Shown: positions 24,104 to 45,637, counted from the first letter of the stretch. The stretch: 60,420 bases of DNA from Dendrobates tinctorius (GCF_039654945.1 NW_027361881.1:1922001-1982420), one strand, 5' to 3'. The notes: generated by a model from the letters alone, not told the origin. Program-made: numbers and translations.

Positions 24104-24558
24104 GGGACAGGAGGGGACGTGTGGAGGTACATGAGGGGCCATGTGAAGGGACACGAGGGGCCGTCCAGAGGGACACGAGGGGCCGTCCAGAGGGACACGA
24201 GGGGACGTGTGGAGGTACATGAGGGGCTGTACGAAGGTACACGAGGGGCCTTGCAGAGGGACACAAGGGGCCTTGCAGAGGGACACGAGGGGTTATGTGA
24301 AGGGACACAAGAGGCCTTGCAGAGGGACACGAGGGGATGTGTGAAGGGACATGAGGGGCCTTGCAGAGGGACATAAGGGGACGTGTGGAGGTACATGAGT
24401 GGCTGTGCGAAGGGACACGCGGGGCCTTGCAGAGGGACAAGAGGGGCCTTGCAGAGGGACATGAGGGGATATGTGAAGGGACATGAGGGGCCTTGCAGAG
24501 GGACATAAGGGGACGTGTGGAGGTACATGAGTGGCTGTGCGAAGGGACATGAGGGGCC
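24104..24558. repeat. ~20-21-bp G-rich composite minisatellite
   Basis: Units such as GGGACACGAGGGGCCTTGCAGA and GGGACATGAGGGGATATGTGAA. Confidence 0.88.
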
Positions 24559-24891
24559 CTGTGGAGGAGTTGTCAGAGTAAAGTTTTTCTACATCAGGTC
24601 CTGAAGTCGCTCAGAGCCTAATAATACAATTTATACAAATCCGCTCGTCACGTCTGTGTTTGTGTGCGGCGTCACAGTTACATTAGAGTGCGAGCTCCTA
24701 TGACGAGAAACTCCCCGGCCGTCATACCGAGACTCCACAAAGGGTGAGAAAATGTAATAATGAGAGAAACCTCCGACTGCGGAGGAAACAGACGCTCAGG
24801 TTTCCACTGACAATGGCAGCGACTGAGGAGAGAAGTGCAAGAGATGAAACTTGTCTGCGACATGACACGAGATAAATCCGGAGATTCTTAC

Positions 24892-24941
24892 AGGTTCTGC
24901 CGCTCAGAGTCACAGGCCGCGATACACAGATAGGTCATTTC
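24892..24941 (-). CDS. dusp22a: dusp22a-like coding exon 4 (general-acid Asp)
   Basis: 50 nt, CT-rich acceptor and GTAAGA donor; EMTYLCIAACDSERQN(L). Confidence 0.95.
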
Positions 24942-25620
24942 CTACAAGAGAGAGAGAGAGCAGAAATCATGGCCATGAATGTAGGGAGCCCCCGGCAACA
25001 GTAATACACGACATGTACAGCCACATTAATCAAACACTCCAGATTATAAAGAGCCTCACAGTGTGAACAATCAGGGTTCAGCCTCATTGACTTCATTGTG
25101 TGTTTGGGGGAAGCATGAGAGGGTCCCAGAGGGGTCCTAGGAGCATCTGCTGGGTGGTATAATGTTTGCTGGGCGGATCAGCAGATATTTATAATGGTTG
25201 GTATTGAGCTGTGCACCTGTGCCTCCTTCTCACACCGTGCAGCAGGACTCCCAGCACTGAGCAGTCCGTCAGTCCGCTAATATTGTGCCCCTGCGTGACC
25301 AGGGCATACTGCAGAGCGGACAGCGCACAGGTTTATTTTTGCGCAGAGGAGACAGAACATGGCAGCGATTCATCCTCAGCCCCAGAGATCGCTGCAGAAA
25401 TAAAAATAACCTGCGCAGTGCTGCAGCAGAGCCACGTCGCACGCCATGTCCCCTGTGTGTGGCAGGAAGAAATAGGAACAGGAAAGGGGTGACCGGTTGA
25501 GTAACACATCGAGCAGAGATTGAGGGCAGGGACCGCAACGTCGGGAGGATGGGACTCTGCATCCTCCACAGATGTCTCTGCTCCTTCTGCTTCTCCCAGA
25601 GACAAGAGCAAAGGAAACAG

Positions 25621-26391
25621 CTGCAGGGGGCTCAGAGCACAAGAGAGGCTCCCGGGAAACCACAGGACACCGCCTGTCACCGCTCATGATCAATGGTGAC
25701 AATCACTAAGTCCTGAGCAGGGGAGCAGCGCATCAGACCCCTCAGAGTCCCGCAGCGTCCCCCCAACAACAGCACCGGACACCGCAGAGGCAAAGTCACA
25801 CTCCAGTGCTGCAGGGGGCTCAGAGCACAAGAGACGCTCCCGGGAAACCAAAGGACACTGCCTGTCACCGCTCATGATCAACGGTGGCAATCACAACGTC
25901 CTGAGCAGGGGAGCAGCGCATCAGGCCCCCCAGAGTCCCGCAGCATCCCCCCAACAACAGCACCGGACACCGCAGAGGCAAAGTCACACTCCAGTGCTGC
26001 AGGGGGCTCAGAGCACAAGAGACGCTCCCGGGAAACTAAAGGACACTGCCTGTCACCGCTCATGATCAATGGTGGCAATCACAACGTCCTGAGCAGGGGA
26101 GCAGCGCATCAGGCCCCCCAGAGTCCCGCAGCGTCCCCCCAACAACAGCACCGGACACCGCAGAGGCAAAGTCACACTCCAGTGCTGCAGGGGGCTCAGG
26201 GCACAAGAGACGCTCCCGGGAAACCAAAGGACACTGCCTGTCACCGCTCATGATCAATGGTGGCAATCACAACGTCCTGAGCAGGGGAGCAGCGCTTCAG
26301 GCCCCCCAGAGTCTTGCAGCGTCCCCCCAACAACAGCACCGGACACCGCAGAGGCAGAGCACGCAGCTCAGTCACACTCCAGTACTGCAGG
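25621..26391. repeat. 188-bp tandem repeat, ~4 units
   Basis: Near-identical ORFs recur at 25690, 25878 and 26066 (188-bp spacing). Confidence 0.93.
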
Positions 26392-26645
26392 ACCTGTAAA
26401 TCAGCATCCAATCACTACAACCTCACTAATGACTGATACTGATAATGGGGGGAAAAATGCTGCAATCAATGACTGATACTGATAATGGGGGGAGAGATGC
26501 CGCATTCACTACTGACTGATTTTGCTCATTGACCCCTAATAATAATTGTCATAGGTAATAAAGCATTAGATACAGATCACCATTATGGAACAGTTCTAAA
26601 ACTAAATTGTGATTATCAAATAGCAAGTGTCTTACAGACACCACG

Positions 26646-29600
26646 CTGCAGTAACGGCAATGCAATACTGCCCTCTGGTGCACAGATAATACTCTGCAGT
26701 AATATACTGTAATGCTGCCCTCTGGTGCACAGACAATACTCTGCAGTAATATTATACTGTAATACTGCCCTCTGGTGCACAGACAACACTCTGCAGTAAT
26801 ATTATACTGTAATACTGCCCTCTGGTGCACAGATAATACTCTGCAGTAATATACTGCAATGCTGCCCTCTGGTGCACAGATAATACTCTGCAGTAATATA
26901 CTGCAATGCTGCCCTCTGGTGCACAGACAATACTCTGCAGTAATATTATACTGTAATACTGCCCTCTGGTGCACAGACAACACTCTGCAGTAATATTATA
27001 CTGTAATACTGCCCTCTGGTGCACAGATAATACTCTGCAGTAATATTATACTGTAATACTGCCCTCTGGTGCACAGACAATACTCTGCAGTAATATTATA
27101 CTGTAATACTGCCCTCTGGTGCACAGACAACACTCTGCAGTAATATTATACTGTAATACTGCCCTCTGGTGCACAGATAATACTCTGCAGTAATATACTG
27201 CAATGCTGCCCTCTGGTGCACAGATAATACTCTGCAGTAATATACTGCAATGCTGCCCTCTGGTGCACAGATAATACTCTGCAGTAATATTATACTGTAA
27301 TACTGCCCTCTGGTGCACAGACAATACTCTGCAGTAATATTATACTGTAATACAGCCCTCTGGTGCACAGACAAAACTCTGCAGTAATATTATACTGTAA
27401 TACCGCCCTCTGGTGCACAGATAATACTCTGCAGTAATATTATACTGTAATACTGCCCTCTGGTGCACAGACAAAACTCTGCAGTAATATACTGCAATAC
27501 TGCCCTCTGGTGCACAGATAATACTCTGCAGTAATATACTGCAAAACTGCCCTCTGGTGCACAGATAATACTCTGCAGTAATATACTGCAAAACTGCCCT
27601 CTGGTGCACAGATAATACTCTGCAGTAATATTATACTGTAATACTGCCCTCTGGTGCACAGATAATAGTCTGCAGTAATATTATACTGTAATACTGCCCT
27701 CTGGTGCACAGATAATACTCTGCAGTAATATTATACTGTAATACTGCCCTCTGGTGCACAGATAATAGTCTGCAGTAATATTATACTGTAATACAGCCCT
27801 CTGGTGCACAGACAAAACTCTGCAGTAATATTATACTGTAATACCGCCCTCTGGTGCACAGATAATACTCTGCAGTAATATTATACTGTAATACTGCCCT
27901 CTGGTGCACAGACAAAACTCTGCAGTAATATACTGCAATACTGCCCTCTGGTGCACAGATAATACTCTGCAGTAATATACTGCAAAACTGCCCTCTGGTG
28001 CACAGATAATACTCTGCAGTAATATTATACTGTAATACTGCCCTCTGGTGCACAGACAATACTCTGCAGTAATATTATACTGTAATACTGCCCTCTGGTG
28101 CACAGATAATACTCTGCAGTAATATACTGCAATGCTGCCCTCTGGTGCACAGATAATACTCTGCAGTAATATTATACTGTAATACTGCCCTCTGGTGCAC
28201 AGATAATACTCTGCAGTAATATTATACTGCAATGCTGCCCTCTGGTGCACAGACAATACTCTGCAGTAATATTATACTGTAATACTGCCCTCTGGTGCAC
28301 AGATAATACTCTGCAGTAATATTATACTGTAATACTGCCCTCTGGTGCACAGACAAAACTCTGCAGTAATATACTGCAATACTGCCCTCTGGTGCACAGA
28401 TAATACTCTGCAGTAATATACTGCAAAACTGCCCTCTGGTGCACAGATAATACTCTGCAGTAATATACTGCAAAACTGCCCTCTGGTGCACAGATAATAC
28501 TCTGCAGTAATATTATACTGTAATACTGCCCTCTGGTGCACAGATAATAGTCTGCAGTAATATTACACTGTAATACAGCCCTCTGGTGCACAGAAAATAC
28601 TCTGCAGTAATATTATACTGTAATACTGCCCTCTGGTGCACAGATAATACTCTGCAGTAATATACTGCAATACTGCCCTCTGGTGCACAGATAATACTCT
28701 GCAGTAATATTATACTGTGATACTGCCCTCTGGTGCACAGATAATAGTCTGCAGTAATATTATACTGTAATACTGCCCTCTGGTGCACAGATAATAGTCT
28801 GCTGTAATATTATACTATAATACAGCCCTCTGGTGCACAGAAAATACTCTGCAGTAATATTATACTGTAATACTGCCCTCTGGTGCACAGATAATACTCT
28901 GCAGTAATATACTGCAATACTGCCCTCTGGTGCACAGATAATACTCTGCAGTAATATTATACTGTGATACTGCCCTCTGGTGCACAGATAATAGTCTGCA
29001 GTAATATTATACTGTAATACTGCCCTCTGGTGCACAGATAATAGTCTGCTGTAATATTATACTATAATACAGCCCTCTGGTGCACAGAAAATACTCTGCA
29101 GTAATATTATACTGTGATACTGCCCTCTGGTGCACAGATAATAGTCTGCAGTAATATTATACTGTAATACTGCCCTCTGGTGCACAGATAATAGTCTGCA
29201 GTAATATTATACTGTAATACAGCCCTCTGGTGCACAGAAAATACTCTGCAGTAATATTATACTGTAATACTGCCCTCTGGTGCACAGATAATACTCTGCA
29301 GTAATATACTGCAATACTGCCCTCTGGTGCACAGATAATACTCTGCAGTAATATACTGCAAAACTGCCCTCTGGTGCACAGATAATACTCTGCAGTAATA
29401 TTATACTGTAATACTGCCCTCTGGTGCACAGATAATAGTCTGCAGTAATATTATACTGCAATACTGCCCTCTGGTGCACAGATAATAGTCTGCAGTAATA
29501 TTATACTGTAATACTGCCCTCTGGTGCACAGATAATAGTCTGCAGTAATATTATACTGTAATACTGCCCTCTGGTGCACAGATAATAGTCTGCAGTAATA

Positions 29601-32600
29601 TTATACTGTAATACTGCCCTCTGGTGCACAGATAATACTCTGCAGTAATATACTGCAATACTGCCCTCTGGTGCACAGATAATACTCTGCAGTAACACAC
29701 TGCAATACTGCCCTCTGGTGCACAGATAATACTCTGCAGTAATATTATACTGCAATACTGCCCTCTGGTGCACAGACAATACTCTGCAGTAATATAGTGC
29801 AATACTGCCCTCTGGTGCACAGATAATACTCTGCAGTAATATTATACTGTAATACTGCCCTCTGGTGCACACATAATAGTCTGCAGTAATATTATACTGT
29901 AATACTGCCCTCTGGTGCACAGATAATAATCTGCAGTAATATTATACTGTAATACTGCCCTCTGGTGCACAGATAATACTCTGCAGTAATATACTGCAAT
30001 ACTGCCCTCTGGTGCACAGATAATATTCTACAGTAATATACTGCAATACTGCCATCTGGTGGACAGGTAATAGTCTGCAGTAATATTATACTGCAATACT
30101 GCCCTCTGGTGCACATTTAATATTCTGCAGTAATATTATACTGTAATACTGCCCTCTAGTGCACAGATAATACTCTGCAGTAATATTATTCTGTAATACT
30201 GCCCTCTGGTGCACAGATAATATTCTGCAGTAATAAACTGCAATACTGCTCTCTGGTGAACAGATAATACTCTGCAGTAATATTATACTGTAATACTGCC
30301 CTCTGGTGCACAGATAATACTCTGCAGTAATATTATACAGTAATACCGCCCTCTGGTGTCCAGATAATACTCTGCAGTAATATTATACTGTAATACTGCC
30401 CTCTAGTGTCCAGATAATACTCTGCAGTAATATACTGCAATACTGTCCTCTGGTGCACAGATAATATTCTGCAGTAATATACTGCAATACTGCCCTCTGG
30501 TGCACAGATAATACTCTGCAGTAATATACTGTAATACTGCCCTCTGGTGCACAGAAAATAGTCTGCAGTAATATTATACTGCAATGCTGCCCTCTGGTGC
30601 ACAGATAATACTCTGCAGTAATATTATACTGCAATACTGCCCTCTGGTGCACAGATAATACTCTGCAGTAATATTATACAGCAATACTGCCCTCTGGTGC
30701 ACAGATAATATTCTACAGTAATATACTGCAATAATGCCATCTGGTGGACAGGTAATAGTCTGCAGTAATATTATACTGCAATACTGCCCTCTGGTGCACA
30801 TTTAATATTCTGCAGTAATATTATACTGTAATACTGCCCTCTAGTGCACAGATAATACTCTGCAGTAATATTATTCTGTAATACTACCCTCTGGTGCACA
30901 GATAATATTCTGCAGTAATAAACTGCAATGCTGCCCTCTGGTGCACAGATAATACCCTGCAGCAATATACTGCAATACTGCCCTCTGGTGCACAGATAAT
31001 ACTCTGCAGTAATATTATACTGTAATACCGCCCTCTAGTGTCCAGATAATTGTCTGCAGTAATATTATACTGTAATACCGCCCTCTAGTGTCCAGATAAT
31101 AGTCTGCAGTAATATTATACTGTAATACCGCCCTCTAGTGTCCAGATAATACTCTGCAGTAATATTATACTGTAATACCGCCCTCTAGTGTCCAGATAAT
31201 ACTCTGCAGTAATATTATACTGTAATACCGCCCTCTGATGTCCAGATAATAGTCTGCAGTAATATTATACTGTAATACCGTCCTCTAGTGTCGAGATAAT
31301 ACTCTGCAGTAATATTATACTGTAATACCGCCCTCTGATGTCCAGATAATACTCTGCAGTAATATTATACTGTAATACCGCCCTCTGATGTCCAGATAAT
31401 AGTCTGCAGTAATATTATACTGTAATACTGCCTTCTGATGTCCAGATAATACTCTGCAGTAATATTATACTGTAATACCGCCCTCTAGTGTCCAGATAAT
31501 ACTCTGCAGTAATATTATACTGTAATACTGCCCTCTGATGTCCAGATAATACTCTGCAGTAATATTATACTGTAATACCGCCCTCTGATGTCCAGATAAG
31601 TCTGCAGTAATATTATACTGTAATACCGCCCTCTAGTGTCCAGATAATACTCTGCAGTAATATTATACTGTAATACCGCCCTCTGATGTCCAGATAATAC
31701 TCTGCAGTAATATTATACTGTAATACCGCCCTCTGATGTCCAGATAATACTCTGCAGTAATATTATACTGTAATACCGCCCTCTAGTGTCCAGATAATAC
31801 TCTGCAGTAATATTATACTGTAATACCGCCCTCTAGTGTCCAGATAATAGTCTGCAGTAATATTATACTGTAATACCGCCCTCTAGTGTCCAGATAATAC
31901 TCTGCAGTAATATTATACTGTAATACTGCCTTCTGATGTCCAGATAATACTCTGCAGTAATATTATACTGTAATACCGCCCTCTAGTGTCCAGATAATAC
32001 TCTGCAGTAATATTATACTGTAATACCGCCCTCTAGTGTCCAGATAATAGTCTGCAGTAATATTATACTGTAATACCGCCCTCTAGTGTCCAGATAATAC
32101 TCTGCAGTAATATTATACTGTAATACTGCCTTCTGATGTCCAGAAAATACTCTGCAGTAATATTATACTGTAATACCGCCCTCTAGTGTCCAGATAATAC
32201 TCTGCAGAAATATTATACTGTAATACCGCCCTCTAGTGTCCAGATAATACTCTGCAGTAATATTATACTGTAATACCGCCCTCTGATGTCCAGATAATAC
32301 TCTGCAGTAATATTATACTGTAATACTGCCCTCTAGTGTCCAGATAATACTCTGCAGTAATATTATGCTGTAATACCGCCCTCTGGTGTCCAGATAATAC
32401 TCTGCAGAAATATTATACTGTAATACCGCCCTCTAGTGTCCAGATAATACTCTGCAGAAATATTATACTGTAATACCGCCCTCTAGTGTCCAGATAATAC
32501 TCTGCAGTAATATTATACTGTAATACTGCCCTCTAGTGTCCAGATAATACTCTGCAGTAATATTACACTGTAATACCGCCTTCTGATGTCCAGATAATAC

Positions 32601-35600
32601 TCTGCAGTAATATTATACTGTAATACTGCCCTCTAGTGTCCAGATAATACTCTGCAGTAATATTATGCTGTAATACCGCCCTCTGGTGTCCAGATAATAC
32701 TCTGCAGTAATATACTGCAATACTGCCCTCTGGTGCACAGATAATACTCTGCAGTAATATACTGTAATACTGCCCTCTGGTGCACAGATAATAGTCTGCA
32801 GTAATATTATACTGCAATGCTGCCCTCTGGTGCACAGATAAAACTCTGCAGTAATATTATACTGCAATACTGCCCTCTGGTGCACAGATAATACTCTGCA
32901 GTAATATTATACTGCAATACTGCCCTCTGGTGCACAGATAATACTCTGCAGTAATATTATTCTGTAATACTGCCCTCTGGTGAACAGATAATACTCTGCA
33001 GTAACATACTGCAATACTGCCCTCTGGTGCACAGATAATATTCTGCAGTAATATTATACTGTAATACTGCCCTGTGGTGCACAGATAATAGTCTGCAGCA
33101 ATATACTGCAATACTGCCCTCTGGTGCACAGATAATACTCTGCAGTAATATTATACTGTAATACCGCCCTCTAGTGTCCAGATAATTGTCTGCAGTAATA
33201 TTATACTGTAATACCGCCCTCTAGTGTCCAGATAATAGTCTGCAGTAATATTGTACTGTAATACCGCCCTCTAGTGTCCAGATAATACTCTGCAGTAATA
33301 TTATACTGTAATACCGCCCTCTAGTGTCCAGATAATACTCTGCAGTAATATTATACTGTAATACCGCCCTCTAGTGTCGAGATAATACTCTGCAGTAATA
33401 TTATACTGTAATACCGCCCTCTGATGTCCAGATAATACTCTACAGTAATATTATACTGTAATACCGCCCTCTAGTGTCGAGATAATACTCTGCAGTAATA
33501 TTATACTGTAATACCGCCCTCTGATGTCCAGATAATAGTCTGCAGTAATATTATACTGTAATACCGCCCTCTGATGTCCAGATAATAGTCTGCAGTAATA
33601 TTATACTGTAATACCGCCCTCTAGTGTCGAGATAATACTCTGCAGTAATATTATACTGTAATACCGCCCTCTGATGTCCAGATAATACTCTACAGTAATA
33701 TTATACTGTAATACCGCCCTCTAGTGTCGAGATAATACTCTGCAGTAATATTATACTGTAATACCGCCCTCTGATGTCCAGATAATAGTCTGCAGTAATA
33801 TTATACTGTAATACCGCCCTCTGATGTCCAGATAATACTCTGCAGTAATATTATACTGTAATACCGCCCTCTAGTGTTGAGATAATACTCTGCAGTAATA
33901 TTATACTGTAATACCGCCCTCTAGTGTCGAGATAATACTCTGCAGTAATATTATACTGTAATACCGCCCTCTGATGTCCAGATAATAGTCTGCAGTAATA
34001 TTATACTGTAATACCGCCCTCTAGTGTCGAGATAATACTCTGCAGTAATATTATACTGTAATACCGCCCTCTGATGTCCAGATAATACTCTGCAGTAATA
34101 TTATACTGTAATACCGCCCTCTAGTGTTGAGATAATACTCTGCAGTAATATTATACTGTAATACCGCCCTCTAGTGTTGAGATAATACTCTGCAGTAATA
34201 TTATACTGTAATACCGCCCTCTAGTGTCGAGATAATACTCTGCAGTAATATTATACTGTAATACCGCCCTCTAGTGTCGAGATAATACTCTGCAGTAATA
34301 TTATACTGTAATACCGCCCTCTGATGTCCAGATAATACTCTGCAGTAATATTATACTGTAATACCGCCCTCTGATGTCCAGATAATACTCTGCAGTAATA
34401 TTATACTGTAATACCGCCCTCTGATGTCCAGATAATACTCTGCAGTAATATTACACTGTAATACCGCCCTCTGATGTCCAGATAATAGTCTGCAGTAATA
34501 TTATACTGTAATACCGCCCTCTAGTGTCCAGATAATACTCTGCAGTAATATTATACTGTAATACCGCCCTCTGATGTCCAAATAATACTCTGCAGTAATA
34601 TTATACTGTAATACCGCCCTCTGATGTCCAGATAATAGTCTGCAGTAATATTATACTGTAATACTGCCTTCTGATGTCCAGATAACACTCTGCAGTAATA
34701 TTATACTGTAATACCGCCCTCTAGTGTCCAGATAATACTCTGCAGTAATATTATACTGTAATACCGCCCTCTGATGTCCAGATAATACTCTGCAGAAATA
34801 TTATACTGTAATACCGCCCTCTAGTGTCCAGATAATAGTCTGCAGTAATATTATACTGTAATACCGCCCTCTAGTGTCCAGATAATACTCTGCAGTAATA
34901 TACTGTAATACTGCCTTCTGATGTCCAGATAATACTCTGCAGTAATATTATACTGTAATACCGCCCTCTGATGTCCAGATAATACTCTGCAGTAATATTA
35001 TACTGTAATACCGCCCTCTAGTGTCCAGATAATACTCTGCAGAAATATTATACTGTAATACCGCCCTCTAGTGTCCAGATAATACTCTGCAGTAATATTA
35101 TACTGTAATACTGCCTTCTGATGTCCAGATAATACTCTGCAGTAATATTATACTGTAATACCGCCCTCTAGTGTCCAGATAATACTCTGCAGAAATATTA
35201 TACTGTAATACCGCCCTCTAGTGTCCAGATAATACTCTGCAGTAATATTATACTGTAATACTGCCCTCTAGTGTCCAGATAATACTCTGCAGTAATATTA
35301 CACTGTAATACTGCCTTCTGATGTCCAGATAATACTCTGCAGTAATATTATACTGTAATACTGCCCTCTAGTGTCCAGATAATACTCTGCAGTAATATTA
35401 TACTGTAATACCGCCCTCTGGTGTCTAGATAATACTCTGCAGTAATATACTGCAATACTGCCCTCTGGTGCACAGATAATACTCTGCAGTAATATACAGT
35501 AATACTGCCCTCTGGTGCACAGATAATACTCTGCAGTAATATTATACTGCAATGCTGCCCTCTGATGCACAGATAATACTCTGCAGTAATATTACACTCT

Positions 35601-38600
35601 AATACTGCCTTCTGATGTCCAGATAATACTCTGCAGTAATATTATACTGTAATACTGCCCTCTAGTGTCCAGATAATACTCTGCAGTAATATTATACTGT
35701 AATACCGCCCTCTGGTGTCCAGATAATACTCTGCAGTAATATACTGCAATACTGCCCTCTGGTGCACAGATAATACTCTGCAGTAATATACAGTAATACT
35801 GCCCTCTGGTGCACAGATAATACTCTGCAGTAATATTATACTGCAATACTGCCCTCTGATGCACAGATAATACTCTGCAGTAATATTATACTGCAATACT
35901 ACCCTCTGGTGCACAGATAATACTCTGCAGTAATATTATTCTGTAATACTGCCCTCTGGTGCACAGATAATATTCTGCAGTAATATTATACTGTAATACT
36001 GCCCTCTGGTGCACAGATAATAGTCTGCAGTAATATTATACTGTAATACTGCCCTCTGGTGCACAGATAATAGTCTGCAGTAATATTATACTGCAATGCT
36101 GTCCTCTGGTGCACAGATAATAGTCTGCAGTAATATTATACTGTAATACTGCCCTCTGGTGCACAGATAATAGTCTGCAGTAATATTATACTGTAATACT
36201 GCCCTGTGGTGCACAGATAATACTCTGCAGTAATATTATACTGTAATACCGCCCTCTGATGTCCAGATAATACTCTGCAGCAATATACTGCAATACTGCC
36301 CTCTGGTGCACAGATAATACTCTGCAGTAATATTATACTGTAATACCGCCCTCTAGTGTCCAAATAATACTCTGCAGTAATATTATACTGTAATACCGCC
36401 CTCTGATGTCCAGATAATAGTCTGCAGTAATATTATACTGTAATACCGCCCTCTAGTGTCGAGATAATACTCTGCAGTAATATTATACTGTAATACCGCC
36501 CTCTGATGTCCAGATAATACTCTACAGTAATATTATACTGTAATACCGCCCTCTAGTGTCGAGATAATACTCTGCAGTAATATTATACTGTAATACCGCC
36601 CTCTGATGTCCAGATAATAGTCTGCAGTAATATTATACTGTAATACCGCCCTCTAGTGTCGAGATAATACTCTGCAGTAATATTATACTGTAATACCGCC
36701 CTCTGATGTCCAGATAATACTCTGCAGTAATATTATACAGTAATACCGCCCTCTAGTGTTGAGATAATACTCTGCAGTAATATTATACTGTAATACCGCC
36801 CTCTAGTGTCGAGATAATACTCTGCAGTAATATTATACTGTAATACCGCCCTCTGATGTCCAGATAATAGTCTGCAGTAATATTATACTGTAATACCGCC
36901 CTCTAGTGTCGAGATAATACTCTGCAGTAATATTATACTGTAATACCGTCCTCTGATGTCCAGATAATACTCTGCAGTAATATTATACTGTAATACCGCC
37001 CTCTAGTGTTGAGATAATACTCTGCAGTAATATTATACTGTAATACCGCCCTCTAGTGTTGAGATAATACTCTGCAGTAATATTATACTGTAATACCGCC
37101 CTCTAGTGTTGAGATAATACTCTGCAGTAATATTATACTGTAATACCGCCCTCTAGTGTCGAGATAATACTCTGCAGTAATATTATACTGTAATACCGCC
37201 CTCTAGTGTCCAGATAATACTCTGCAGTAATATTATACTGTAATACCGCCCTCTGATGTCCAGATAATACTCTGCAGTAATATTATACTGTAATACCGCC
37301 CTCTGATGTCCAGATAATACTCTGCAGTAATATTATACTGTAATATCGCCCTCTGATGTCCAGATAATACTCTGCAGTAATATTATACTGTAATACCGCC
37401 CTCTGATGTCCAGATAATACTCTGCAGTAATATTATACTGTAATACCGCCCTCTGATGTCCAGATAATAGTCTGCAGTAATATTATACTGTAATATCGCC
37501 CTCTGATGTCCAGATAATACTCTGCAGTAATATTATACTGTAATACTGCCCTCTAGTGTCGAGATAATACTCTGCAGTAATATTATACTGTAATACCGCC
37601 CTCTGATGTCCAGATAATACTCTACAGTAATATTATACTGTAATACCGCCCTCTAGTGTCGAGATAATACTCTGCAGTAATATTATACTGTAATACCGCC
37701 CTCTGATGTCCAGATAATAGTCTGCAGTAATATTATACTGTAATACCGCCCTCTAGTGTCGAGATAATACTCTGCAGTAATATTATACTGTAATACCGCC
37801 CTCTGATGTCCAGATAATACTCTGCAGTAATATTATACAGTAATACCGCCCTCTAGTGTTGAGATAATACTCTGCAGTAATATTATACTGTAATACCGCC
37901 CTCTAGTGTCGAGATAATACTCTGCAGTAATATTATACTGTAATACCGCCCTCTGATGTCCAGATAATAGTCTGCAGTAATATTATACTGTAATACCGCC
38001 CTCTAGTGTCGAGATAATACTCTGCAGTAATATTATACTGTAATACCGTCCTCTGATGTCCAGATAATACTCTGCAGTAATATTATACTGTAATACCGCC
38101 CTCTAGTGTTGAGATAATACTCTGCAGTAATATTATACTGTAATACCGCCCTCTAGTGTTGAGATAATACTCTGCAGTAATATTATACTGTAATACCGCC
38201 CTCTAGTGTTGAGATAATACTCTGCAGTAATATTATACTGTAATACCGCCCTCTAGTGTCGAGATAATACTCTGCAGTAATATTATACTGTAATACCGCC
38301 CTCTAGTGTCCAGATAATACTCTGCAGTAATATTATACTGTAATACCGCCCTCTGATGTCCAGATAATACTCTGCAGTAATATTATACTGTAATACCGCC
38401 CTCTGATGTCCAGATAATACTCTGCAGTAATATTATACTGTAATATCGCCCTCTGATGTCCAGATAATACTCTGCAGTAATATTATACTGTAATACCGCC
38501 CTCTGATGTCCAGATAATACTCTGCAGTAATATTATACTGTAATACCGCCCTCTGATGTCCAGATAATAGTCTGCAGTAATATTATACTGTAATACTGCC

Positions 38601-41600
38601 TTCTGATGTCCAGATAATAGTCTGCAGTAATATTATACTGTAATACCGCCCTCTAGTGTCCAGATAATACTCTGCAGTAATATTATACTGTAATACCGCC
38701 CTCTGATGTCCAGATAATAGTCTGCAGTAATATTATACTGTAATACCGCCCTCTAGTGTCCAGATAATACTCTGCAGTAATATTATACTGTAATACCGCC
38801 CTCTGATGTCCAGATAATACTCTGCAGTAATATTATACTGTAATACCGCCCTCTGATGTCCAGATAATAGTCTGCAGTAATATTATACTGTAATACTGCC
38901 TTCTGATGTCCAGATAACACTCTGCAGTAATATTATACTGTAATACCGCCCTCTAGTGTCCAGATAATACTCTGCAGTAATATTATACTGTAATACCGCC
39001 CTCTGATGTCCACATAATACTCTGCAGAAATATTATACTGTAATACCGCCCTCTAGTGTCCAGATAATAGTCTGCAGTAATATTATACTGTAATACCGCC
39101 CTCTAGTGTCCAGATAATACTCTGCAGTAATATACTGTAATACTGCCTTCTGATGTCCAGATAATACTCTGCAGTAATATTATACTGTAATACCGCCCTC
39201 TAGTGTCCAGATAATACTCTGCAGAAATATTATACTGTAATACCGCCCTCTAGTGTCCAGATAATACTCTGTAGTAATATTATACTGTAATACTGCCCTC
39301 TAGTGTCCAGATAATACTCTGCAGTAATATTACACTGTAATACTGCCTTCTGATGTCCAGATAATACTCTGCAGTAATATTATACTGTAATACTGCCTTC
39401 TAGTGTCCAGATAATACTCTGCAGTAATATTATACTGTAATACCGCCCTCTGGTGTCTAGATAATACTCTGCAGTAATATACTGTAATACTGCCCTCTGG
39501 TGCACAGATAATACTCTGCAGTAATATTATACTGCAATGCTGCCCTCTGATGCACAGATAATACTCTGCAGTAATATTATACTGTAATACTGCCCTCTAG
39601 TGTTCAGATAATACTCTGCAGTAATATTATACTGTAATACCGCCCTCTGGTGTCCAGATAATACTCTGCAGTAATATACTGCAATACTGCCCTCTGGTGC
39701 ACAGATAATACTCTGCAGTAATATACAGTAATACTGCCCTCTGGTGCACAGATAATACTCTGCAGTAATATTATACTGCAATACTGCCCTCTGATGCACA
39801 GATAATACTCTGCAGTAATATTATACTGCAATACTGCCCTCTGGTGCACAGATAATACTCTGCAGTAATATTATTCTGTAATACTGCCCTCTGGTGCACA
39901 GATAATATTCTGCAGTAATATTATACTGTAATACTGCCCTCTGGTGCACAGATAATAGTCTGCAGTAATATTATACTGTAATACTGCCCTCTGGTGCACA
40001 GATAATAGTCTGCAGTAATATTATACTGCAATGCTGCCCTCTGGTGCACAGATAATAGTCTGCAGTAATATTATACTGTAATACTGCCCTGTGGTGCACA
40101 GATAATACTCTGCAGTAATATTATACTGTAATACCGCCCTCTGATGTCCAGATAATACTCTGCAGCAATATACTGCAATACTGCCCTCTGGTGCACAGAT
40201 AATACTCTGCAGTAATATTATACTGTAATACCGCCCTCTAGTGTCCAGATAATTGTCTGCAGTAATATTATACTGTAATACCGCCCTCTAGTGTCCAGAT
40301 AATAGTCTGCAGTAATATTATACTGTAATACCGCCCTCTAGTGTCCAGATAATACTCTGCAGTAATATTATACTGTAATACCGCCCTCTAGTGTCCAGAT
40401 AATACTCTGCAGTAATATTATACTGTAATACGGCCCTCTGATGTCCAGATAATAGTCTGCAGTAATATTATACTGTAATACCGCCCTCTAGTGTCGAGAT
40501 AATACTCTGCAGTAATATTATACTGTAATACCGCCCTCTGATGTCCAGATAATACTCTGCAGTAATATTATACTGTAATACCGCCCTCTGATGTCCAGAT
40601 AATAGTCTGCAGTAATATTATACTGTAATACCGCCCTCTAGTGTCGAGAAAATACTCTGCAGTAATATTATACTGTAATACCGCCCTCTGATGTCCAGAT
40701 AATACTCTGCAGTAATATTATACTGTAATACCGCCCTCTGATGTCCAGATAATACTCTGCAGTAATATTATACTGTAATACCGCCCTCTAGTGTCGAGAT
40801 AATACTCTGCAGTAATATTATACTGTAATACCGCCCTCTGATGTCCAGATAATACTCTGCAGTAATATTATACTGTAATACCGCCCTCTAGTGTCGAGAA
40901 AATACTCTGCAGTAATATTATACTGTAATACCGCCCTCTGATGTCCAGATAATACTCTGCAGTAATATTATACTGTAATACCGCCCTCTGATGTCCAGAT
41001 AATACTCTGCAGTAATATTATACTGTAATACCGCCCTCTAGTGTCGAGATAATACTCTGCAGTAATATTATACTGTAATACCGCCCTCTGATGTCCAGAT
41101 AATACTCTGCAGTAATATTATACTGTAATACCGCCCTCTGATGTCCAGATAATAGTCTGCAGTAATATTATACTGTAATACCGCCCTCTAGTGTCGAGAT
41201 AATACTCTGCAGTAATATTATACTGTAATACCGCCCTCTGATGTCCAGATAATTTTCCGCAGTAATATTATACTGTAATACCGCCCTCTGATGTCCAGAT
41301 AATAGTCTGCAGTAATATTATACTGTAATACCGCCCTCTGATGTCCAGATAATACTCTGCAGTAATATTATACTGTAATACCGCCCTCTGATGTCCAGAT
41401 AATACTCTGCAGTAATATTATACTGTAATACCGCCCTCTGATGTCCAGATAAAAGTCTGCAGTAATATTATACTGTAATACCGCCCTCTGATGTCCAGAT
41501 AATACTCTGCAGTAATATTATACTGTAATACCGCCCTCTGATGTCCAGATAATTTTCCGCAGTAATATTATACTGTAATACCGCCCTCTGATGTCCAGAT

Positions 41601-43603
41601 AATAGTCTGCAGTAATATTATACTGTAATACCGCCCTCTAGTGTCGAGAAAATACTCTGCAGTAATATTATACTGTAATACCGCCCTCTGATGTCCAGAT
41701 AATACTCTGCAGTAATATTATACTGTAATACCGCCCTCTGATGTCCAGATAATACTCTGCAGTAATATTATACTGTAATACCGCCCTCTAGTGTCGAGAT
41801 AATACTCTGCAGTAATATTATACTGTAATACCGCCCTCTGATGTCCAGATAATACTCTGCAGTAATATTATACTGTAATACCGCCCTCTAGTGTCGAGAA
41901 AATACTCTGCAGTAATATTATACTGTAATACCGCCCTCTGATGTCCAGATAATACTCTGCAGTAATATTATACTGTAATACCGCCCTCTGATGTCCAGAT
42001 AATACTCTGCAGTAATATTATACTGTAATACCGCCCTCTAGTGTCGAGATAATACTCTGCAGTAATATTATACTGTAATACCGCCCTCTGATGTCCAGAT
42101 AATACTCTGCAGTAATATTATACTGTAATACCGCCCTCTGATGTCCAGATAATAGTCTGCAGTAATATTATACTGTAATACCGCCCTCTAGTGTCGAGAT
42201 AATACTCTGCAGTAATATTATACTGTAATACCGCCCTCTGATGTCCAGATAATTTTCCGCAGTAATATTATACTGTAATACCGCCCTCTGATGTCCAGAT
42301 AATAGTCTGCAGTAATATTATACTGTAATACCGCCCTCTGATGTCCAGATAATACTCTGCAGTAATATTATACTGTAATACCGCCCTCTGATGTCCAGAT
42401 AATACTCTGCAGTAATATTATACTGTAATACCGCCCTCTGATGTCCAGATAAAAGTCTGCAGTAATATTATACTGTAATACCGCACTCTAGTGTCCAGAT
42501 AATACTCTGCAGTAATATTATACTGTAATACCACCCTCTGATGTCCAGATAATAGTCTGCAGTAATATACTGTAATACCGCCCTCTGATGTCCCGATAAT
42601 ACTCTGCAGTAATATTATACTGTAATACCGCCCTCTGATGTCCAGATAATACTCTGCAGTAATATTATACTGTAATACTGCCCTCTAGTGTCCAGATAAT
42701 AGTCTGCAGTAATACTATACTGTAATACTGCCTTCTGATGTCCAGATAATACTCTGCAGTAATATTATACTGTAATACTGCCTTCTGATGTCCAGATAAT
42801 ACTCTGCAGTAATATTATACTGTAATACTGCCTTCTGATGTCCAGATAACACTCTGCAGTAATATTATACTGTAATATCGCCCTCTAGTGTCCAGATAAT
42901 ACTCTGCAGAAATATTATACTGTAATACTGCCCTCTAGTGTCCAGATAATAGTCTGCAGTAATACTATACTGTAATACTGCCTTCTGATGTCCAGATAAT
43001 ACTCTGCAGTAATACTATACTGTAATACTGCCTTCTGATGTCCAGATAATACTCTGCAGTAATATTATACTGTAATACTGCCTTCTGATGTCCAGATAAC
43101 ACTCTGCAGTAATATTATACTGTAATATCGCCCTCTAGTGTCCAGATAATACTCTGCAGAAATATTATACTGTAATACCGCCCTCTAGTGTCCAGATAAT
43201 ACTCTGCCGTAATATTATACTGTAATACTGGCCTCTAGTGTCCAGATAACACTCTGCAGTAATATTATACTGTAATACTGCCCTCTAGTGTCCAGATAAC
43301 ACTTTGCAGTATTATACTGTAATACCGCCCTCTAGTGTCCAGATAATACTCTGCAGTAATATTATACTGTAACACTGCCCTCTAGTGTCCAGATAACACT
43401 CTGCAGTAATATTATTCTGTAATTCTGCCCTCTATTGTTCAGATAATACTCTGCAGTAATATTATACTGCAATACTGCCCTCTAATTTCCAGATAATACT
43501 CTGTAATAATATTATACTGTAATACCGCCCTCTAGTGTCCAGATAATACTCTGTAGTAATATTATACTGTAATACTGCCCTCTAGTGTCCAGATAATACT
43601 CTG
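26646..43603. repeat. ~17-kb satellite of 50-bp units (some 47-bp), ~340 copies, in dusp intron 3; units carry a CTCF-like motif on the minus strand
   Basis: Type A unit AATACTGCCCTCTGGTGCACAGATAATACTCTGCAGTAATATTATACTGT; type B unit AATACCGCCCTCT(AG/GA)TGTCCAGATAATACTCTGCAGTAATATTATACTGT. Confidence 0.98.
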
Positions 43604-43938
43604 TGACCAAGCATCATAATTACAAAAATGTATTGTAAGAGGGAACTTTCCTCCCTGTGTAGAGCACCAGGTCGGTGTAAGGAGACTTATAGGCCGTGTT
43701 ATGCTCCACTGGGAATGTAAATATGCAAACAGCTATTAATAGAGGAAAAGGACTGACGCTCTAGCGCCCCCTATTGTGGCAGCAATCATAGAAGCTAAAA
43801 GCCAATATCAACCCTGTAACGAGTCAGAGGCCAAATCAGACCTCAAGCTTTGCACTTATGAGAGGCAACAATCCTGGTTAAATAGGATGATGGGATTGAT
43901 GACAGAGACTGACACAAATATTCTCACTAGATTCTCAC

Positions 43939-44021
43939 CGGCAGCAGCGGCTTGGCGTTGTTATGAACGGACACGATGTGGGTGATTCCATGATTGCTCA
44001 GAGACGCCGTATCCTCAGCAT
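43939..44021 (-). CDS. dusp22a: dusp22a-like coding exon 3
   Basis: 83 nt, AG/GT bounded; DAEDTASLSNHGITHIVSVHNNAKPLLP. Confidence 0.95.
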
Positions 44022-44056
44022 CTGCAATGAGAAATGAGTGCAGAAATCATGTATTA

Positions 44057-45078
44057 CACCATCACAGCGCCCATAATCACTACAGAGCACCATGACAGTG
44101 CCCATAATCATTGCAGAGCTCCATGACAGTGCCCATAATCACTACAGAGCTCCATGACAGTACCCATAATCACTACAGAGCTCCATGACAGCGCCCATAA
44201 TCACTACAGAGCACCATGACAGTACCCATAATCACTACAGAGCTCCATGACAGTACCCATAATCACTACAGAGCTCCATGACAGTACCCATAATCACTAC
44301 AGAGCTCCATGACAGTACCCATAATCACTACAGAGCTCCATGACAGTACCCATAATCACTACAGAGCTCCATGACAGCGCCCATAATCACTACAGAGCAC
44401 CATGACAGCGCCCATAATCACTACAGAGCTCCATGACAGTACCCATAATCACTACAGAGCTCCATGACAGCGCCCATAATCACTACAGAGCACCATGACA
44501 CCTCCCAGAATCACTACAGAGCACCATGACAGCTCCCAGAATCACAACAGAGCACCAAGACAGTGCCCATAATCACTACAGAGCTCCATGACAGTGCCCA
44601 TAATCACTACAGAGCACCATCACAGCGCCCATAATCACTACAGAGCACCAAGACAGTGCCCATAATCACTACAGAGCTCCATGACAGCGCCCATCATCAC
44701 TACAGAGCACCATGACAGTGCCCATAATCACTACAGAGCTCCATGACAGTACCCAAAATCACTACAGAGCTCCATGACAGCGCCCATCATCACTACAGAG
44801 CACCATGACAGCGCCCATCATCACTACAGAGCACCATGACAGCGCCCATCATCACTACAGAGCACCATGGCAGCACCCAGAATCACTACAGAGCCTAATG
44901 ACAGCGCCCAGAATCACTACAGAGCACCATGACAGCGCCCAGAATCACTACAGAGCACCATCACAGCGCCCAGAATCACTACAGAGCACCATGACAGCGC
45001 CCAGAATCACTACAGAGCACCATGACAGTGCCCAGAATCACTACAGAGCACCATGACCGCGCCCAGAATCACTACAGA
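44057..45078. repeat. 31-bp minisatellite, ~33 units, filling dusp intron 2
   Basis: Unit ACAGYRCCCATAATCACTACAGAGCWCCATG. Confidence 0.96.
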
Positions 45079-45176
45079 GGACACTCCTGCTGGCTCTGGC
45101 GCAGACTGCCTTCGGTGCAGGTGAGCGGCGCAGTCTCGGTGTCTCAGCCTCTTCTGATGCTTCGGCTCGTACTCAC

Positions 45177-45210
45177 CTCGTATGTTCCCCAGATATAACC
45201 CATCCAGAAC
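45177..45210 (-). CDS. dusp22a: dusp22a-like coding exon 2
   Basis: 34 nt, TTGCAG acceptor and GTGAGT donor; VLDGLYLGNIR. Confidence 0.95.
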
Positions 45211-45637
45211 CTGCAACATAAAACATGGGATGATCTGACAACATGGAAATACTGACACTCCGATAATCCAGAATCTGATAATCCAGAAACAATCAAGACC
45301 AAAGAACAGATCACCCCAAATATATCACTCCCATCAGCTGTCACCGCTGGTGCCTTCATGTGAGCGGTCCGCGGGTATTACTAATACTGTATACGGGGTG
45401 ACTGTCAGCAGCGGCTCAGGCACACAGTGTCAGGCCACAGCACCTGGACCACCCAGACCCCAAACCCCGCACACCCTCCTGTCTAATCCGTGCAGAGCTG
45501 ACACTCAGCGCTTACCGCAGCTATTTATATGTCTTGTTTACCCCATAGAGACGCTAATAATAAAACTCCACAGCTGAGACTCATCGCACCAGAAGGCGTC
45601 CCCCAGGGGGCGCAGCACTCATCAACCTGGTGAAGCA

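What the first reader, a model, noticed from the sequence alone, without database searches (positions are those of the whole stretch)
26646..43603. 17-kb intronic satellite built from ~340 co-oriented bipartite CTCF-like sites
Seen: on the minus strand the 50-bp unit reads CTGCAG-AGTATTATCTGT-GCACCAGAGGGCAG (type A) or CTGCAG-AGTATTATCTGG-ACACTAGAGGGCGG (type B). Both cores match the CTCF consensus CCASYAGRKGGCRS at 13/14 positions; the ACATCAG variant matches 12/14. A TGCAG lies 12 nt upstream of the core. Known: TGCAG at about this spacing is the upstream module read by CTCF zinc fingers 9-11, and CTCF-bound tandem repeats such as mammalian DXZ4 and Firre act as chromatin boundaries. Most variation between units leaves AGAGGGC and TGCAG intact, and 47-bp deletions fall outside the site. 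All sites point toward lower coordinates. Type B adds a CpG in the core (GGCG), so it could be methylation-tunable. Inference: a copy-number-variable polar insulator or loop-extrusion barrier between the COX4I1 housekeeping promoter and the domain to the left (IRF8 side in human synteny). Caveat: the first consensus C is replaced in nearly all units.
Basis: partly seen in the sequence, partly recalled or inferred. Interest (0 to 1): 0.85.

Follow-up and report, generated by a model that had tools for sequence, protein, structure and literature searches.

The report
Ancient CTCF-type site amplified 342-fold
A 17-kb repeat in a frog intron consists of 342 head-to-tail copies of a 50-bp piece carrying a CTCF-type site that four other frogs keep as a single copy at the same spot, so it is a natural, very dense bank of potential chromatin-boundary sites; whether it is bound is untested.

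Summary
Window 26664-43606 is a 50-bp minisatellite of 342 units. 338 units carry a strong CTCF-matrix match, all on the minus strand (about 20 sites per kb). Shuffled units almost never reach these scores, and none of the 12 other array units tested in the window does.

The array is not in COX4I1. It fills intron 3 of dusp22a, the gene between cox4i1 and irf8.

Four other frogs (Xenopus tropicalis, Spea, Engystomops, Leptodactylus) have one strong CTCF-type motif at the collinear place. It lies after the same exon, before the same conserved non-coding element, on the gene strand. The Leptodactylus copy matches the array unit at 17 of 17 bases. None of these loci has an array there. So the array is a lineage-specific, in-situ amplification of an old, orientation-conserved CTCF-type site.

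Binding and insulation remain untested. Selection on individual units is at best marginal. The upstream TGCAG module is in the right register but incomplete and not conserved. The CpG of types B and C is derived and sits at core position 12, which is not the methylation-sensitive position.

Verdict: a new variant of a known kind (CTCF-site tandem arrays). Origin well supported; function inferred.

The parts
26664..43606 (-). 50-bp minisatellite: 342 units, each with one CTCF-type core in the orientation of the dusp22a gene
   Evidence: TRF; segmentation; matrix scan gives 338 hits at p<1e-4, all on the minus strand
26664..31009 (-). 3' domain of the array, almost purely type A (GCACCAGAGGGCAG); most of the 47-bp units lie here
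   Evidence: Unit-type map
31010..43606 (-). 5' domain: a mosaic of types B, C and D. It shows 250-bp, 1-kb and roughly 3.9-kb higher-order periodicities, each large block carrying a short type-A insert. Ancestral-type cores (ACACTAGAGGGCAG) cluster at the 5' edge (units 0, 4, 6, 13, 18)
43942..44028 (-). dusp22a exon 3 (residues about 17-46, ...THIVSVHNNAKPLLP), which ends 335 bp upstream of the array
   Evidence: tblastn with frog dusp22a proteins; orthologous exon found in L001-L004
24891..24950 (-). dusp22a exon 4 (residues about 46-63). Intron 3 therefore runs 24951-43941, about 19.0 kb, of which about 16.9 kb is the array
   Evidence: tblastn
25479..25680 (-). Conserved non-coding element just downstream of the array in the same intron. 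It serves as the collinearity marker: the order is exon 3, then site or array, then this element
   Evidence: 81% identity to Engystomops over 210 bp, E=2e-49; four-frog alignment A1
25620..26356 (.). 188-bp tandem array (3.9 copies) that re-amplifies the first roughly 51 bp of the conserved element
   Evidence: TRF; periodic BLAST hits at 25680, 25868, 26056 and 26244
43762..43780 (-). Weak single CTCF-like match (10.9 bits) between exon 3 and the array, in the same orientation
52569..55742 (-). COX4I1 coding exons (55659-55742, 54683-54859, 53783-53914, 52569-52751). The gene lies wholly to the right of the array
   Evidence: Pfam COX4; tblastn with frog COX4I1
14229..47182 (-). dusp22a gene body. 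Exon 1 is at 47159-47182, exon 2 at 45178-45219, exon 5 at 18301-18374, exon 6 at about 17692-17871 and exon 7 at 14229-14423
   Evidence: tblastn; Pfam DSPc; split Cys codon checked

Best explanation
The array is a lineage-specific, in-situ tandem amplification of a roughly 50-bp stretch. That stretch contains an old, orientation-conserved CTCF-type site in intron 3 of dusp22a, the gene between cox4i1 and irf8.

Birth was most likely by slippage between short direct repeats. In Leptodactylus, GCAGTA flanks the single-copy homologue 42 bp apart. Growth then came by unequal exchange and segmental duplication, in a genome region where 61% of the DNA is minisatellite.

Every copy keeps the core in the ancestral orientation. 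The locus is therefore now a bank of about 340 potential CTCF sites at 50-bp pitch. Their cohesin-blocking (N-terminal, ZF3) side faces lower coordinates, towards the conserved non-coding element, the rest of dusp22a and irf8.

Most likely at least part of the array still does the ancestral job of a polar loop-extrusion barrier, the upstream border of the irf8-side domain. The 342-fold amplification itself need not have been selected.

Shown: array anatomy, motif strength, orientation, intron position, and single-copy homologues in four frogs. Inferred: CTCF occupancy, barrier function and the mechanism of birth.
For: Motif strength and specificity:
- Scores are 15-20 bits, and 338 of 342 units are co-oriented.
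- Shuffles reach the observed score in 0-2 of 5000 trials, and the 12 other array units tested score 8 bits or less.

Orthology. On the gene strand, between the orthologous exon 3 and the conserved element (to the locus end in Leptodactylus), each outgroup frog has one strong hit:
- X. tropicalis, L003 10535-10553, 16.2 bits.
- Spea, L004 3473-3491, 17.4 bits.
- Engystomops, L001 23632-23650, 19.6 bits.
- Leptodactylus, L002 25425-25443, 18.7 bits.
The number of chance hits this good expected per interval is 0.0004-0.002.

Similarity beyond the core. The Leptodactylus site matches the unit at 17/17 bases. A further 10 of 15 (Leptodactylus) and 9 of 15 (Engystomops) bases upstream of the matrix span also match. 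BLAST gives 81% over 32 bp and 73% over 71 bp.

Collinearity. The order exon 3, site or array, conserved element holds in Xenopus, Spea, Engystomops and the window; the Leptodactylus locus ends before the element.

Lineage-specificity. The other frog loci have no such array.

Ancestral units. Ancestral-type units cluster at the array's 5' edge.

Orientation. The conserved element is inverted between frog lineages while the CTCF-type site keeps its orientation.

Frog CTCF biology. X. tropicalis TAD borders show convergent CTCF motifs with CTCF and Rad21 binding (PMC8270788). The N-terminal side lies downstream of the core (PMC12885311).
Against: - There are no occupancy, methylation or Hi-C data for this species.
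- Rare variants are not depleted at contact bases (P=0.18-0.25).
- Re-placing variant columns at random lowers the mean score only non-significantly (P=0.20).
- About 100 units carry T at core position 4, which the matrix disfavours.
- CpG observed/expected in the array is 0.37, typical of methylated DNA.
- The upstream module is incomplete.
- Flanks strictly outside the unit do not align with the other frogs (P=0.05-0.55), so orthology rests on position, strand and about 35-40 bp of similarity.
- Human alpha-satellite arrays enriched in CTCF motifs showed no significant binding signal by DiMeLo-seq (bioRxiv 10.64898/2026.07.18.739380).
Confidence: 0.6

Rival explanations
1. The array is a neutral by-product that is now silent. 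The conserved site merely happened to lie in a stretch that slipped and expanded, as many other stretches in this region did. The array is methylated, nucleosomal and essentially unbound. The ancestral boundary is either lost or carried by a few units.
For: - 61% of the window lies in 14 unrelated arrays.
- A neighbouring 188-bp array amplifies part of the conserved element, and a 25-bp array matches a stretch of a repeat shared with Leptodactylus. So this genome appears to amplify whatever sequence is present.
- Rare variants are not depleted at contact positions.
- CpG observed/expected is 0.37.
- Frog minisatellite expansion by unequal crossing-over is documented (PMC10794172).
- Human alpha-satellite arrays enriched in CTCF motifs showed no significant binding signal (10.64898/2026.07.18.739380).
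Against: - 97% of units keep at least 11.6 bits, against a mean of 76% when variant columns are re-placed at random (P=0.046).
- Common variants avoid the nine contact positions (P=0.038).
- A site conserved for a very long time is unlikely to become dispensable.
- The core has no CpG at the methylation-sensitive C2, so methylation alone need not evict CTCF (PMC6222495).
Confidence: 0.28
2. The array is a selected, copy-number-variable and methylation-tunable super-insulator. On this view amplification was favoured because more sites give stronger or adjustable insulation between COX4I1 and the irf8 domain.
For: - Insulation rises with the number of tandem CTCF sites (PMC12885311, PMC11417384).
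- The DXZ4 bank of co-oriented motifs directs contacts according to its orientation (PMC5899087).
- TAD borders gain young CTCF sites next to old ones (PMC6945661).
- All units are co-oriented.
Against: - Four other frogs manage with one site (Spea has a partial second copy).
- The CpG is at C12, not C2, and is derived.
- There is no evidence of per-unit selection.
- Only one haplotype is available, so copy-number variation is unknown.
- The surrounding arrays expanded without any CTCF motif.
Confidence: 0.08
3. The match is a chance resemblance, or the motif is read by another factor. It would then be a coincidence in an AT-rich minisatellite, or be bound by something else such as CTCFL/BORIS, and have nothing to do with CTCF boundaries.
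For: - One 19-bp match amplified 342 times is a single event, not 342.
- A genome with very many minisatellite families would be expected to hold a few chance matches at p around 1e-6 (my estimate).
- Core position 1 is not C.
Against: - Independent strong matches lie at the collinear position and on the same strand in four other frogs, with 0.0004-0.002 chance hits expected in each.
- Shuffles reach the observed score in 0-2 of 5000 trials.
- Position 1 is A or G in all five frogs, and it is A in the mouse alpha-globin HS-94 CTCF element (PMC11417384).
Confidence: 0.04

Closest known systems
DXZ4/Dxz4 macrosatellite (also ICCE and the Firre repeats) on the mammalian X chromosome
   Same: These are tandem arrays in which every unit carries a CTCF motif, and the DXZ4 motifs are all co-oriented. 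Across species only the short CTCF element (34-57 bp) is conserved. In Dxz4, orientation dictates the direction of long-range contacts (PMC5899087, PMC6125249, PMC3491370).
   Different: Their units are 3-5 kb with 10-100 copies. Here the unit is 50 bp with 342 copies and consists of little more than the site itself. DXZ4 is an array in many mammals, whereas this array is absent from four other frogs, which have a single site. DXZ4 binding is specific to the inactive X and depends on hypomethylation; nothing is known here.
Clustered CTCF sites at TAD borders (young sites gained next to conserved ones)
   Same: New species-specific sites arise next to an old conserved site and are thought to stabilise cohesin and the border (PMC6945661).
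   Different: Those clusters hold a few sites over kilobases and often arose from SINEs or point mutations. Here there are 342 copies produced by tandem amplification of the old site itself.
Frog minisatellite expansions driven by unequal crossing-over
   Same: Tandem arrays of tens-of-bp units are amplified from local or transposon-derived sequence, and 10.7% of X. tropicalis chromosomes are covered by such arrays (PMC10794172). This window is 61% arrays.
   Different: Those are described as concentrated in the terminal 20-30 Mb. The orthologous loci lie mid-chromosome in Xenopus, Engystomops and Leptodactylus, and about 6 Mb from a chromosome end in Spea. The seed here is a conserved regulatory-type site, not a transposon tail.
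Human tRNA VNTR at 1q23.3 and gamma-satellite or 'teucer' CTCF-motif-rich repeats
   Same: These are copy-number-variable tandem repeats whose units bind CTCF or carry its motif, and they have been proposed as boundaries (PMC4041453; 10.64898/2026.07.18.739380).
   Different: Their units are 7.3 kb or about 215 bp. The densest human class reported has about 5,000 motifs per Mb, against about 20,000 per Mb here.

Membership tests
CTCF binding site | 15-19-bp core that matches the CTCF matrix or consensus (contacts of ZF3-7) | tested here: met
   Scores of 15-20 bits for the three main types. 338 of 342 units pass p<1e-4 and 13/14 bases match the IUPAC consensus. The matrix was recalled from memory. 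Sanity check: the mouse alpha-globin CTCF element HS-94 scores 14.8 bits.
CTCF binding site | Upstream module TGCAGTNCC at -17..-9 (ZF9-11), present in about 13-15% of sites | tested here: inconclusive
   TGCAG is in the exact register. However -12 is A, -10 is T and -9 is A, where T, C and C are expected. The module is not conserved: Leptodactylus has TGCAATGTT, Engystomops TACAAAATA and Xenopus TGTAAAACT.
CTCF binding site | Evolutionary conservation of motif and orientation at the orthologous position | tested here: met
   Single strong hits on the gene strand after exon 3 in X. tropicalis, Spea, Engystomops and Leptodactylus, upstream of the conserved element wherever the element is captured (not Leptodactylus).
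CTCF binding site | Occupancy by CTCF and cohesin in chromatin | not testable with these tools
   This needs ChIP, CUT&RUN or DiMeLo-seq.
CTCF-bound tandem arrays (DXZ4 / ICCE / Firre type) | Tandem array with a CTCF motif in every unit, co-oriented | tested here: met
   342 units with 338 hits, all on the minus strand.
CTCF-bound tandem arrays (DXZ4 / ICCE / Firre type) | Kilobase-sized unit (macrosatellite) | tested here: not met
   The unit is 50 or 47 bp.
CTCF-bound tandem arrays (DXZ4 / ICCE / Firre type) | The array itself present in related species | tested here: not met
   No array at the collinear place in four other frogs. Close dendrobatoid relatives could not be read because their files are too large.
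Frog recombination-driven minisatellites | Short-unit array amplified from local sequence, with higher-order duplication | tested here: met
   Single-copy homologue in other frogs. Periodicities of 250 bp, 1 kb and about 3.9 kb. 13 further arrays in the window.
Frog recombination-driven minisatellites | Location in the extended subtelomere (terminal 20-30 Mb) | tested here: inconclusive
   The chromosomal position of the window is unknown. Orthologues lie at 64.7 of 154 Mb (Xenopus), 80.5 of 184.5 Mb (Engystomops), 75.4 of 156 Mb (Leptodactylus) and 35.5 of 41.8 Mb (Spea).

The most novel reading that the evidence does not exclude
The array is really occupied. That would mean hundreds of co-oriented CTCF molecules at 50-bp pitch, with footprints of about 40 bp and so nearly back to back. 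It would be the densest natural CTCF platform described, grown out of a boundary site conserved across distantly related frog families. A linked possibility is that breakage or recombination at the CTCF/cohesin anchor itself seeded the minisatellite. Amphibians lack PRDM9, so crossovers would concentrate at open functional elements. That would tie loop anchors to minisatellite birth. The neighbouring conserved element is also partly amplified.
Probability: 0.2. Interest if true: 0.85.

Novelty: new variant of a known kind. Interest (0 to 1): 0.62.

Why it matters
If the array is bound, it is a natural dose series for loop-extrusion barriers. The same ancestral site is present once in four frogs and 342 times in this one, with fixed orientation and known flanking genes: housekeeping cox4i1/emc8 on one side, and dusp22a and irf8 with a deeply conserved non-coding element on the other. 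It would show how far CTCF packing can go and whether more sites give a harder border.

If the array is unbound, it shows that a conserved architectural site can be swamped by minisatellite expansion without breaking the host gene. It would also warn against reading motif-rich satellites as insulators.

Either way, the comparative result identifies a candidate ancient border of the irf8 regulatory domain in anurans. That candidate can be checked at once in existing X. tropicalis ChIP-seq and Hi-C data.

Tried and rejected
1. Public-collection scans. An exact scan for the unit (29-nt IUPAC pattern) in metagenome contigs and genome contigs found 0 hits. These collections hold little or no frog DNA, so the result is uninformative.

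2. Closest relatives. I tried to fetch the orthologous locus from Ranitomeya variabilis and R. imitator, Dendrobates tinctorius, Phyllobates terribilis, Anomaloglossus and Bufo gargarizans. Gene tables came back (EMC8, COX4I1, then a DSPc gene except in the two Ranitomeya, where none is listed) but no DNA, because the files are too large. The Pyxicephalus and Eleutherodactylus dusp22a isoforms were not on record.

3. Array flanks. Alignment of sequence strictly outside the unit with Engystomops and Leptodactylus is not better than shuffles (P=0.05-0.55). Orthology therefore rests on position, strand and about 35-40 bp of similarity.

4. CpG decay. I first thought the GGCAG form (type A) was a CpG-decay product of GGCGG. 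The outgroups all have CAG, so the CpG form is the derived one.

5. Catalytic cysteine. I first read dusp22a as having lost its catalytic Cys (VHSLAG). That was an artefact of translating through the intron. The Cys codon is split TG|C across the exon 5/6 junction.

6. Subtelomeric region. This explanation for the many arrays is not supported by the mid-chromosome positions of three of the four orthologues.

7. Other checks. Rfam finds nothing in the window. There is no other copy of the unit in the window. The core shares only GCACCA with the REST/NRSE consensus as I recall it, and then diverges; this was done by eye with no tool run.
Full report
**1. The observation**

Tandem Repeats Finder reports one array at 26664-43603 with period 50, 341.7 copies and 93% matches. 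The window contains no N.

I anchored on the core and cut the minus strand into 342 units: 293 of 50 bp, 47 of 47 bp and one of 48 bp. The 14-nt cores are:
- GCACCAGAGGGCAG, 97 units (type A)
- ACACTAGAGGGCGG, 86 units (type B)
- ACATCAGAGGGCGG, 77 units (type C)
- ACATCAGAAGGCAG, 18 units (type D)
- ACACTAGAGGGCAG, 15 units
- 25 rarer forms

Its column sums of 908-913 look right, but it should be re-checked. Types A, B, C and D score 17.3, 20.4, 15.3 and 11.6 bits, with exact p-values of 8e-7, 7e-8, 3e-6 and 2e-5. HS-94, a mouse alpha-globin-locus CTCF element printed in PMC11417384, scores 14.8 bits. 338 of 342 units pass p<1e-4, all on the minus strand, which is 19.9 sites per kb.

Two controls support specificity. 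Dinucleotide-preserving shuffles of the unit reach the observed score in 0/5000, 0/5000 and 2/5000 trials. The units of the 12 other arrays tested score 8.0 bits or less. The match is real and specific to this array. One caveat remains: a motif amplified 342 times is one event, not 342.

**2. Where it lies**

The COX4I1 coding exons are on the minus strand between 55742 and 52569 (Pfam COX4; tblastn). The array is therefore downstream of COX4I1, not inside it.

It does lie inside another gene. tblastn with frog proteins places all seven coding exons of dusp22a ('dual specificity protein phosphatase 22-A') on the minus strand:
- exon 1 at 47182-47159
- exon 2 at 45219-45178
- exon 3 at 44028-43942
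- exon 4 at 24950-24891
- exon 5 at 18374-18301
- exon 6 at about 17871-17692
- exon 7 at 14423-14229

The array starts 335 bp after exon 3. It fills about 16.9 kb of the 19.0-kb intron 3.

Gene tables of relatives show EMC8 on the opposite strand, then COX4I1, then (in all but the two Ranitomeya, where no downstream gene is listed) a DSPc gene on the COX4I1 strand. In Anomaloglossus the DSPc model is fused to IRF domains, which puts irf8 next. So 'intronic' and 'between the COX4I1 promoter and the irf8 side' are both correct, but the host gene is dusp22a.

The species is not identified. Its COX4I1 exons are about 72-98% identical (tblastn, per exon) to those of Ranitomeya, Dendrobates and Phyllobates, and identical to none of them.

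**3. Anatomy of the array**

The 3' quarter (26.7-31.0 kb) is almost purely type A and holds most of the 47-bp units. The rest is a mosaic of B, C and D. It shows periodicities of 5 units, 20 units and about 79-81 units (roughly 3.9 kb). Each large block carries a short type-A insert. This is the signature of growth by unequal exchange and segmental duplication.

There is no other copy of the unit in the window. None was found in the metagenome or prokaryote genome collections either.

Fourteen arrays cover 61% of the window.

**4. Does the variation spare the site?**

Thirteen columns carry a minor allele in at least 10 units. None of them is one of the nine base-contact positions of the core (positions 2, 3, 6, 7, 8, 10, 11, 12, 14); the hypergeometric P is 0.038. 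The six variable columns inside the 15-bp core are exactly positions 1, 4, 5, 9, 13 and 15. That coincidence has odds of 1/5005, but the test is post hoc, and the position classes (nine contact, six degenerate) are my recollection of the structure-based consensus.

Other tests are weaker:
- Rare variants, which better reflect independent mutations, are not depleted at contact positions (P=0.18-0.25).
- Moving each variant column to a random column with the same consensus base gives a mean score of 14.9 +/- 2.1 against the observed 16.8 (P=0.20).
- The fraction of units keeping at least 11.6 bits is 97% against a mean of 76% in those permutations (P=0.046).
- Information content and minor-allele frequency correlate at rho=-0.45 (P=0.056).
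- The core region is, if anything, more polymorphic than the flanks.
- About 100 units carry T at core position 4, which the matrix disfavours.

This is what one expects for any young, homogenised array.

**5. The two-part motif and methylation**

In the ZF3-11 co-crystal structure, the core occupies positions 1-15 and ZF8 spans about -1 to -8. ZF9-11 read -9 to -18. The base-specific or cross-strand contacts named there are T:A at -12, C:G at -10 (with a cross-strand G at -9) and the G's at -15/-16 (PMC10484683). The mouse HS-94 element shows the same layout: TGCATTACC, then 8 bp, then the core (PMC11417384).

In the unit, TGCAG occupies -17..-13, the canonical register. However -12, -10 and -9 are A, T and A. 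Half of the module is therefore present.

The CpG of types B and C is at C12-G13. Methylation there hardly changes binding in vitro, while methylation of C2 blocks it (PMC6222495). In vivo occupancy correlates with methylation at both positions (PMC10484683). Here C2 is followed by A. The 'methylation-tunable' idea is therefore weak.

**6. Related loci: the decisive comparison**

Exact-protein look-ups returned DNA for four frogs.

Engystomops pustulosus (L001):
- The orthologous exon 3 is at 22518-22622.
- 1.0 kb further on, on the gene strand, there is one hit of 19.6 bits, TTGACACTAGGGGGCAGTA.

Leptodactylus fuscus (L002):
- Exon 3 is at 22020-22124.
- The hit is at 25425-25443, TAGACACTAGAGGGCAGTA, 18.7 bits.
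- Its last 17 bases are identical to the array unit.

Xenopus tropicalis (L003):
- Exon 3 is at 9785-9868.
- The hit is at 10535-10553, TGAGCACTAGAGGGCAGAA, 16.2 bits.

Spea bombifrons (L004):
- Exon 3 is at 2866-2949.
- The hit is at 3473-3491, TGAACACAAGAGGGCAGCA, 17.4 bits.
- A 16-nt direct duplicate lies 74 bp downstream.

The number of chance hits this good expected on the gene strand in the interval searched (exon 3 to the conserved element; to the locus end in Leptodactylus) is 0.0004-0.002 per species. In that interval the opposite strand has nothing above 6.5 bits.

Similarity to the unit extends beyond the matrix span. 10 of 15 (Leptodactylus) and 9 of 15 (Engystomops) upstream bases are identical. 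BLAST gives 81% over 32 bp and 73% over 71 bp.

A roughly 240-bp conserved non-coding element follows the site in Xenopus, Spea and Engystomops, and it follows the array in the window (25479-25680). It is 81% identical to Engystomops (E=2e-49), and the four-frog alignment A1 has 67% mean column identity. The L002 locus ends 388 bp past the Leptodactylus site, before the element could be reached.

Where DNA could be read, the other frogs have no array there. Tandem Repeats Finder found only trivial rows in L001 and L002, and none at score 200 or more in L003.

Three further points follow:
- The CAG form, not the CpG form, is ancestral.
- Ancestral-type units sit preferentially at the 5' edge of the array.

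One detail bears on polarity. The conserved element is inverted relative to the gene in Xenopus and Spea compared with Engystomops and the window. The CTCF-type site keeps the gene-strand orientation in all five.

Limits of this comparison:
- Flanks strictly outside the unit do not align better than shuffles.
- The closest relatives could not be read.

**7. How it most likely works**

The sequence shows an old single CTCF-type site that was amplified in place.

In Leptodactylus the homologous stretch is bracketed by GCAGTA 42 bp apart. That is a plausible substrate for the first slippage duplication. Later growth by unequal exchange fits the higher-order structure, and it fits what is known of frog minisatellites (PMC10794172).

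By the usual rule, the N-terminal (ZF3) side of CTCF lies downstream of the core and stalls cohesin arriving from that side (PMC12885311; PMC5899087). The site would then be the upstream anchor of a domain that extends over the conserved element, the rest of dusp22a and irf8. It would separate that domain from the cox4i1/emc8 promoters. [quoted passage not shown]

A full CTCF footprint spans roughly -18 to +21. Neighbouring units at 50-bp pitch could in principle be occupied together; this is my inference. Whether they are occupied is unknown. CpG observed/expected of 0.37 suggests ordinary germline methylation. Motif-rich human satellites are not always bound (10.64898/2026.07.18.739380).

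**8. Comparison with what is known, and verdict**

Tandem arrays that carry a CTCF site in every unit are known: DXZ4, ICCE, Firre and the 1q23.3 tRNA VNTR. So is the gain of young CTCF sites next to old ones at TAD borders (PMC6945661).

This case shares the co-oriented bank of motifs and the pattern that only the short site is conserved. It differs in three ways:
- The unit is little more than the site itself (50 bp, against 3-7 kb).
- The density is about four times that of the densest human class reported.
- It has a clear single-copy ancestor in other species.

I file it as a new variant of a known kind. My confidence in the origin is about 0.85-0.9. My confidence that at least part of the array still works as a polar barrier is about 0.4. 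Overall confidence in the combined statement is 0.6.

Noticed in passing
window 25479-25680 (also L001 25091-25299, L003 11041-11251, L004 3915-4115): A deeply conserved non-coding element of about 240 bp lies in dusp22a intron 3. It is 81% identical between Xenopus and Spea, and between the window and Engystomops. It has long invariant runs, including the E-box-like CAGCTG and CATCTG. It is inverted relative to the gene in Xenopus and Spea compared with Engystomops and the window. There is no Rfam match. It is possibly an enhancer of irf8 or dusp22a.
   Followed up: partly
window 25620-26356: A 188-bp tandem array (3.9 copies) re-amplifies the first roughly 51 bp of that conserved element. 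A second functional-looking sequence in the same intron has therefore been caught up in tandem amplification.
   Followed up: partly
window 9235-10933; 10910-10991; 56060-56181; 56472-56599: The 25-bp array at 9235-10933 matches a 20-22-bp stretch of an interspersed repeat, probably a SINE (not classified here). Longer copies lie at 56472-56599 (93% identical to Leptodactylus L002 24879-25006), 56060-56181 and 10910-10991. This resembles the SINE-tail minisatellites reported in Xenopus (PMC10794172).
   Followed up: partly
whole window: 61% of the 60 kb is tandem arrays: 14 arrays with periods of 20-188 bp. The orthologous loci of Engystomops, Leptodactylus and Xenopus have almost none. Three of the four orthologues lie mid-chromosome, so a subtelomeric position is not an obvious explanation.
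   Followed up: partly
window 20187-20205 (-), 15119-15137 (+), 45597-45615 (+), 19256-19274 (+): Further single strong CTCF-matrix hits (18.9, 16.7, 15.5 and 13.1 bits) lie in other dusp22a introns. That is four at p of 1e-5 or less, where about 0.5 is expected in the non-array sequence (my estimate). The hit at 20187 is co-oriented with the array.
   Followed up: no
window 18301-18303 / 17871: The catalytic Cys codon of dusp22a is split across the exon 5/6 junction (TG|C). Translating straight through the intron gives a false 'VHSLAGVSRS' that looks like a dead phosphatase. The gene appears intact.
   Followed up: yes
L004 3470-3485 and 3544-3559: In Spea the CTCF-type site has a 16-nt direct duplicate 74 bp downstream (15/16 identical; the second copy scores 11.5 bits). 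The site has therefore also been locally duplicated in a second lineage.
   Followed up: partly
window 11467-12380 (+): Remnant of a DDE-type transposase ORF, probably Tc1/mariner-like. Pfam DDE_3 matches at 12150-12380, scoring exactly at its cut-off.
   Followed up: no
window 47651-52045: A 4.4-kb array of 65-bp units fills most of the interval between the COX4I1 stop codon (52569) and dusp22a exon 1 (47182). That interval is the presumed dusp22a promoter region.
   Followed up: no
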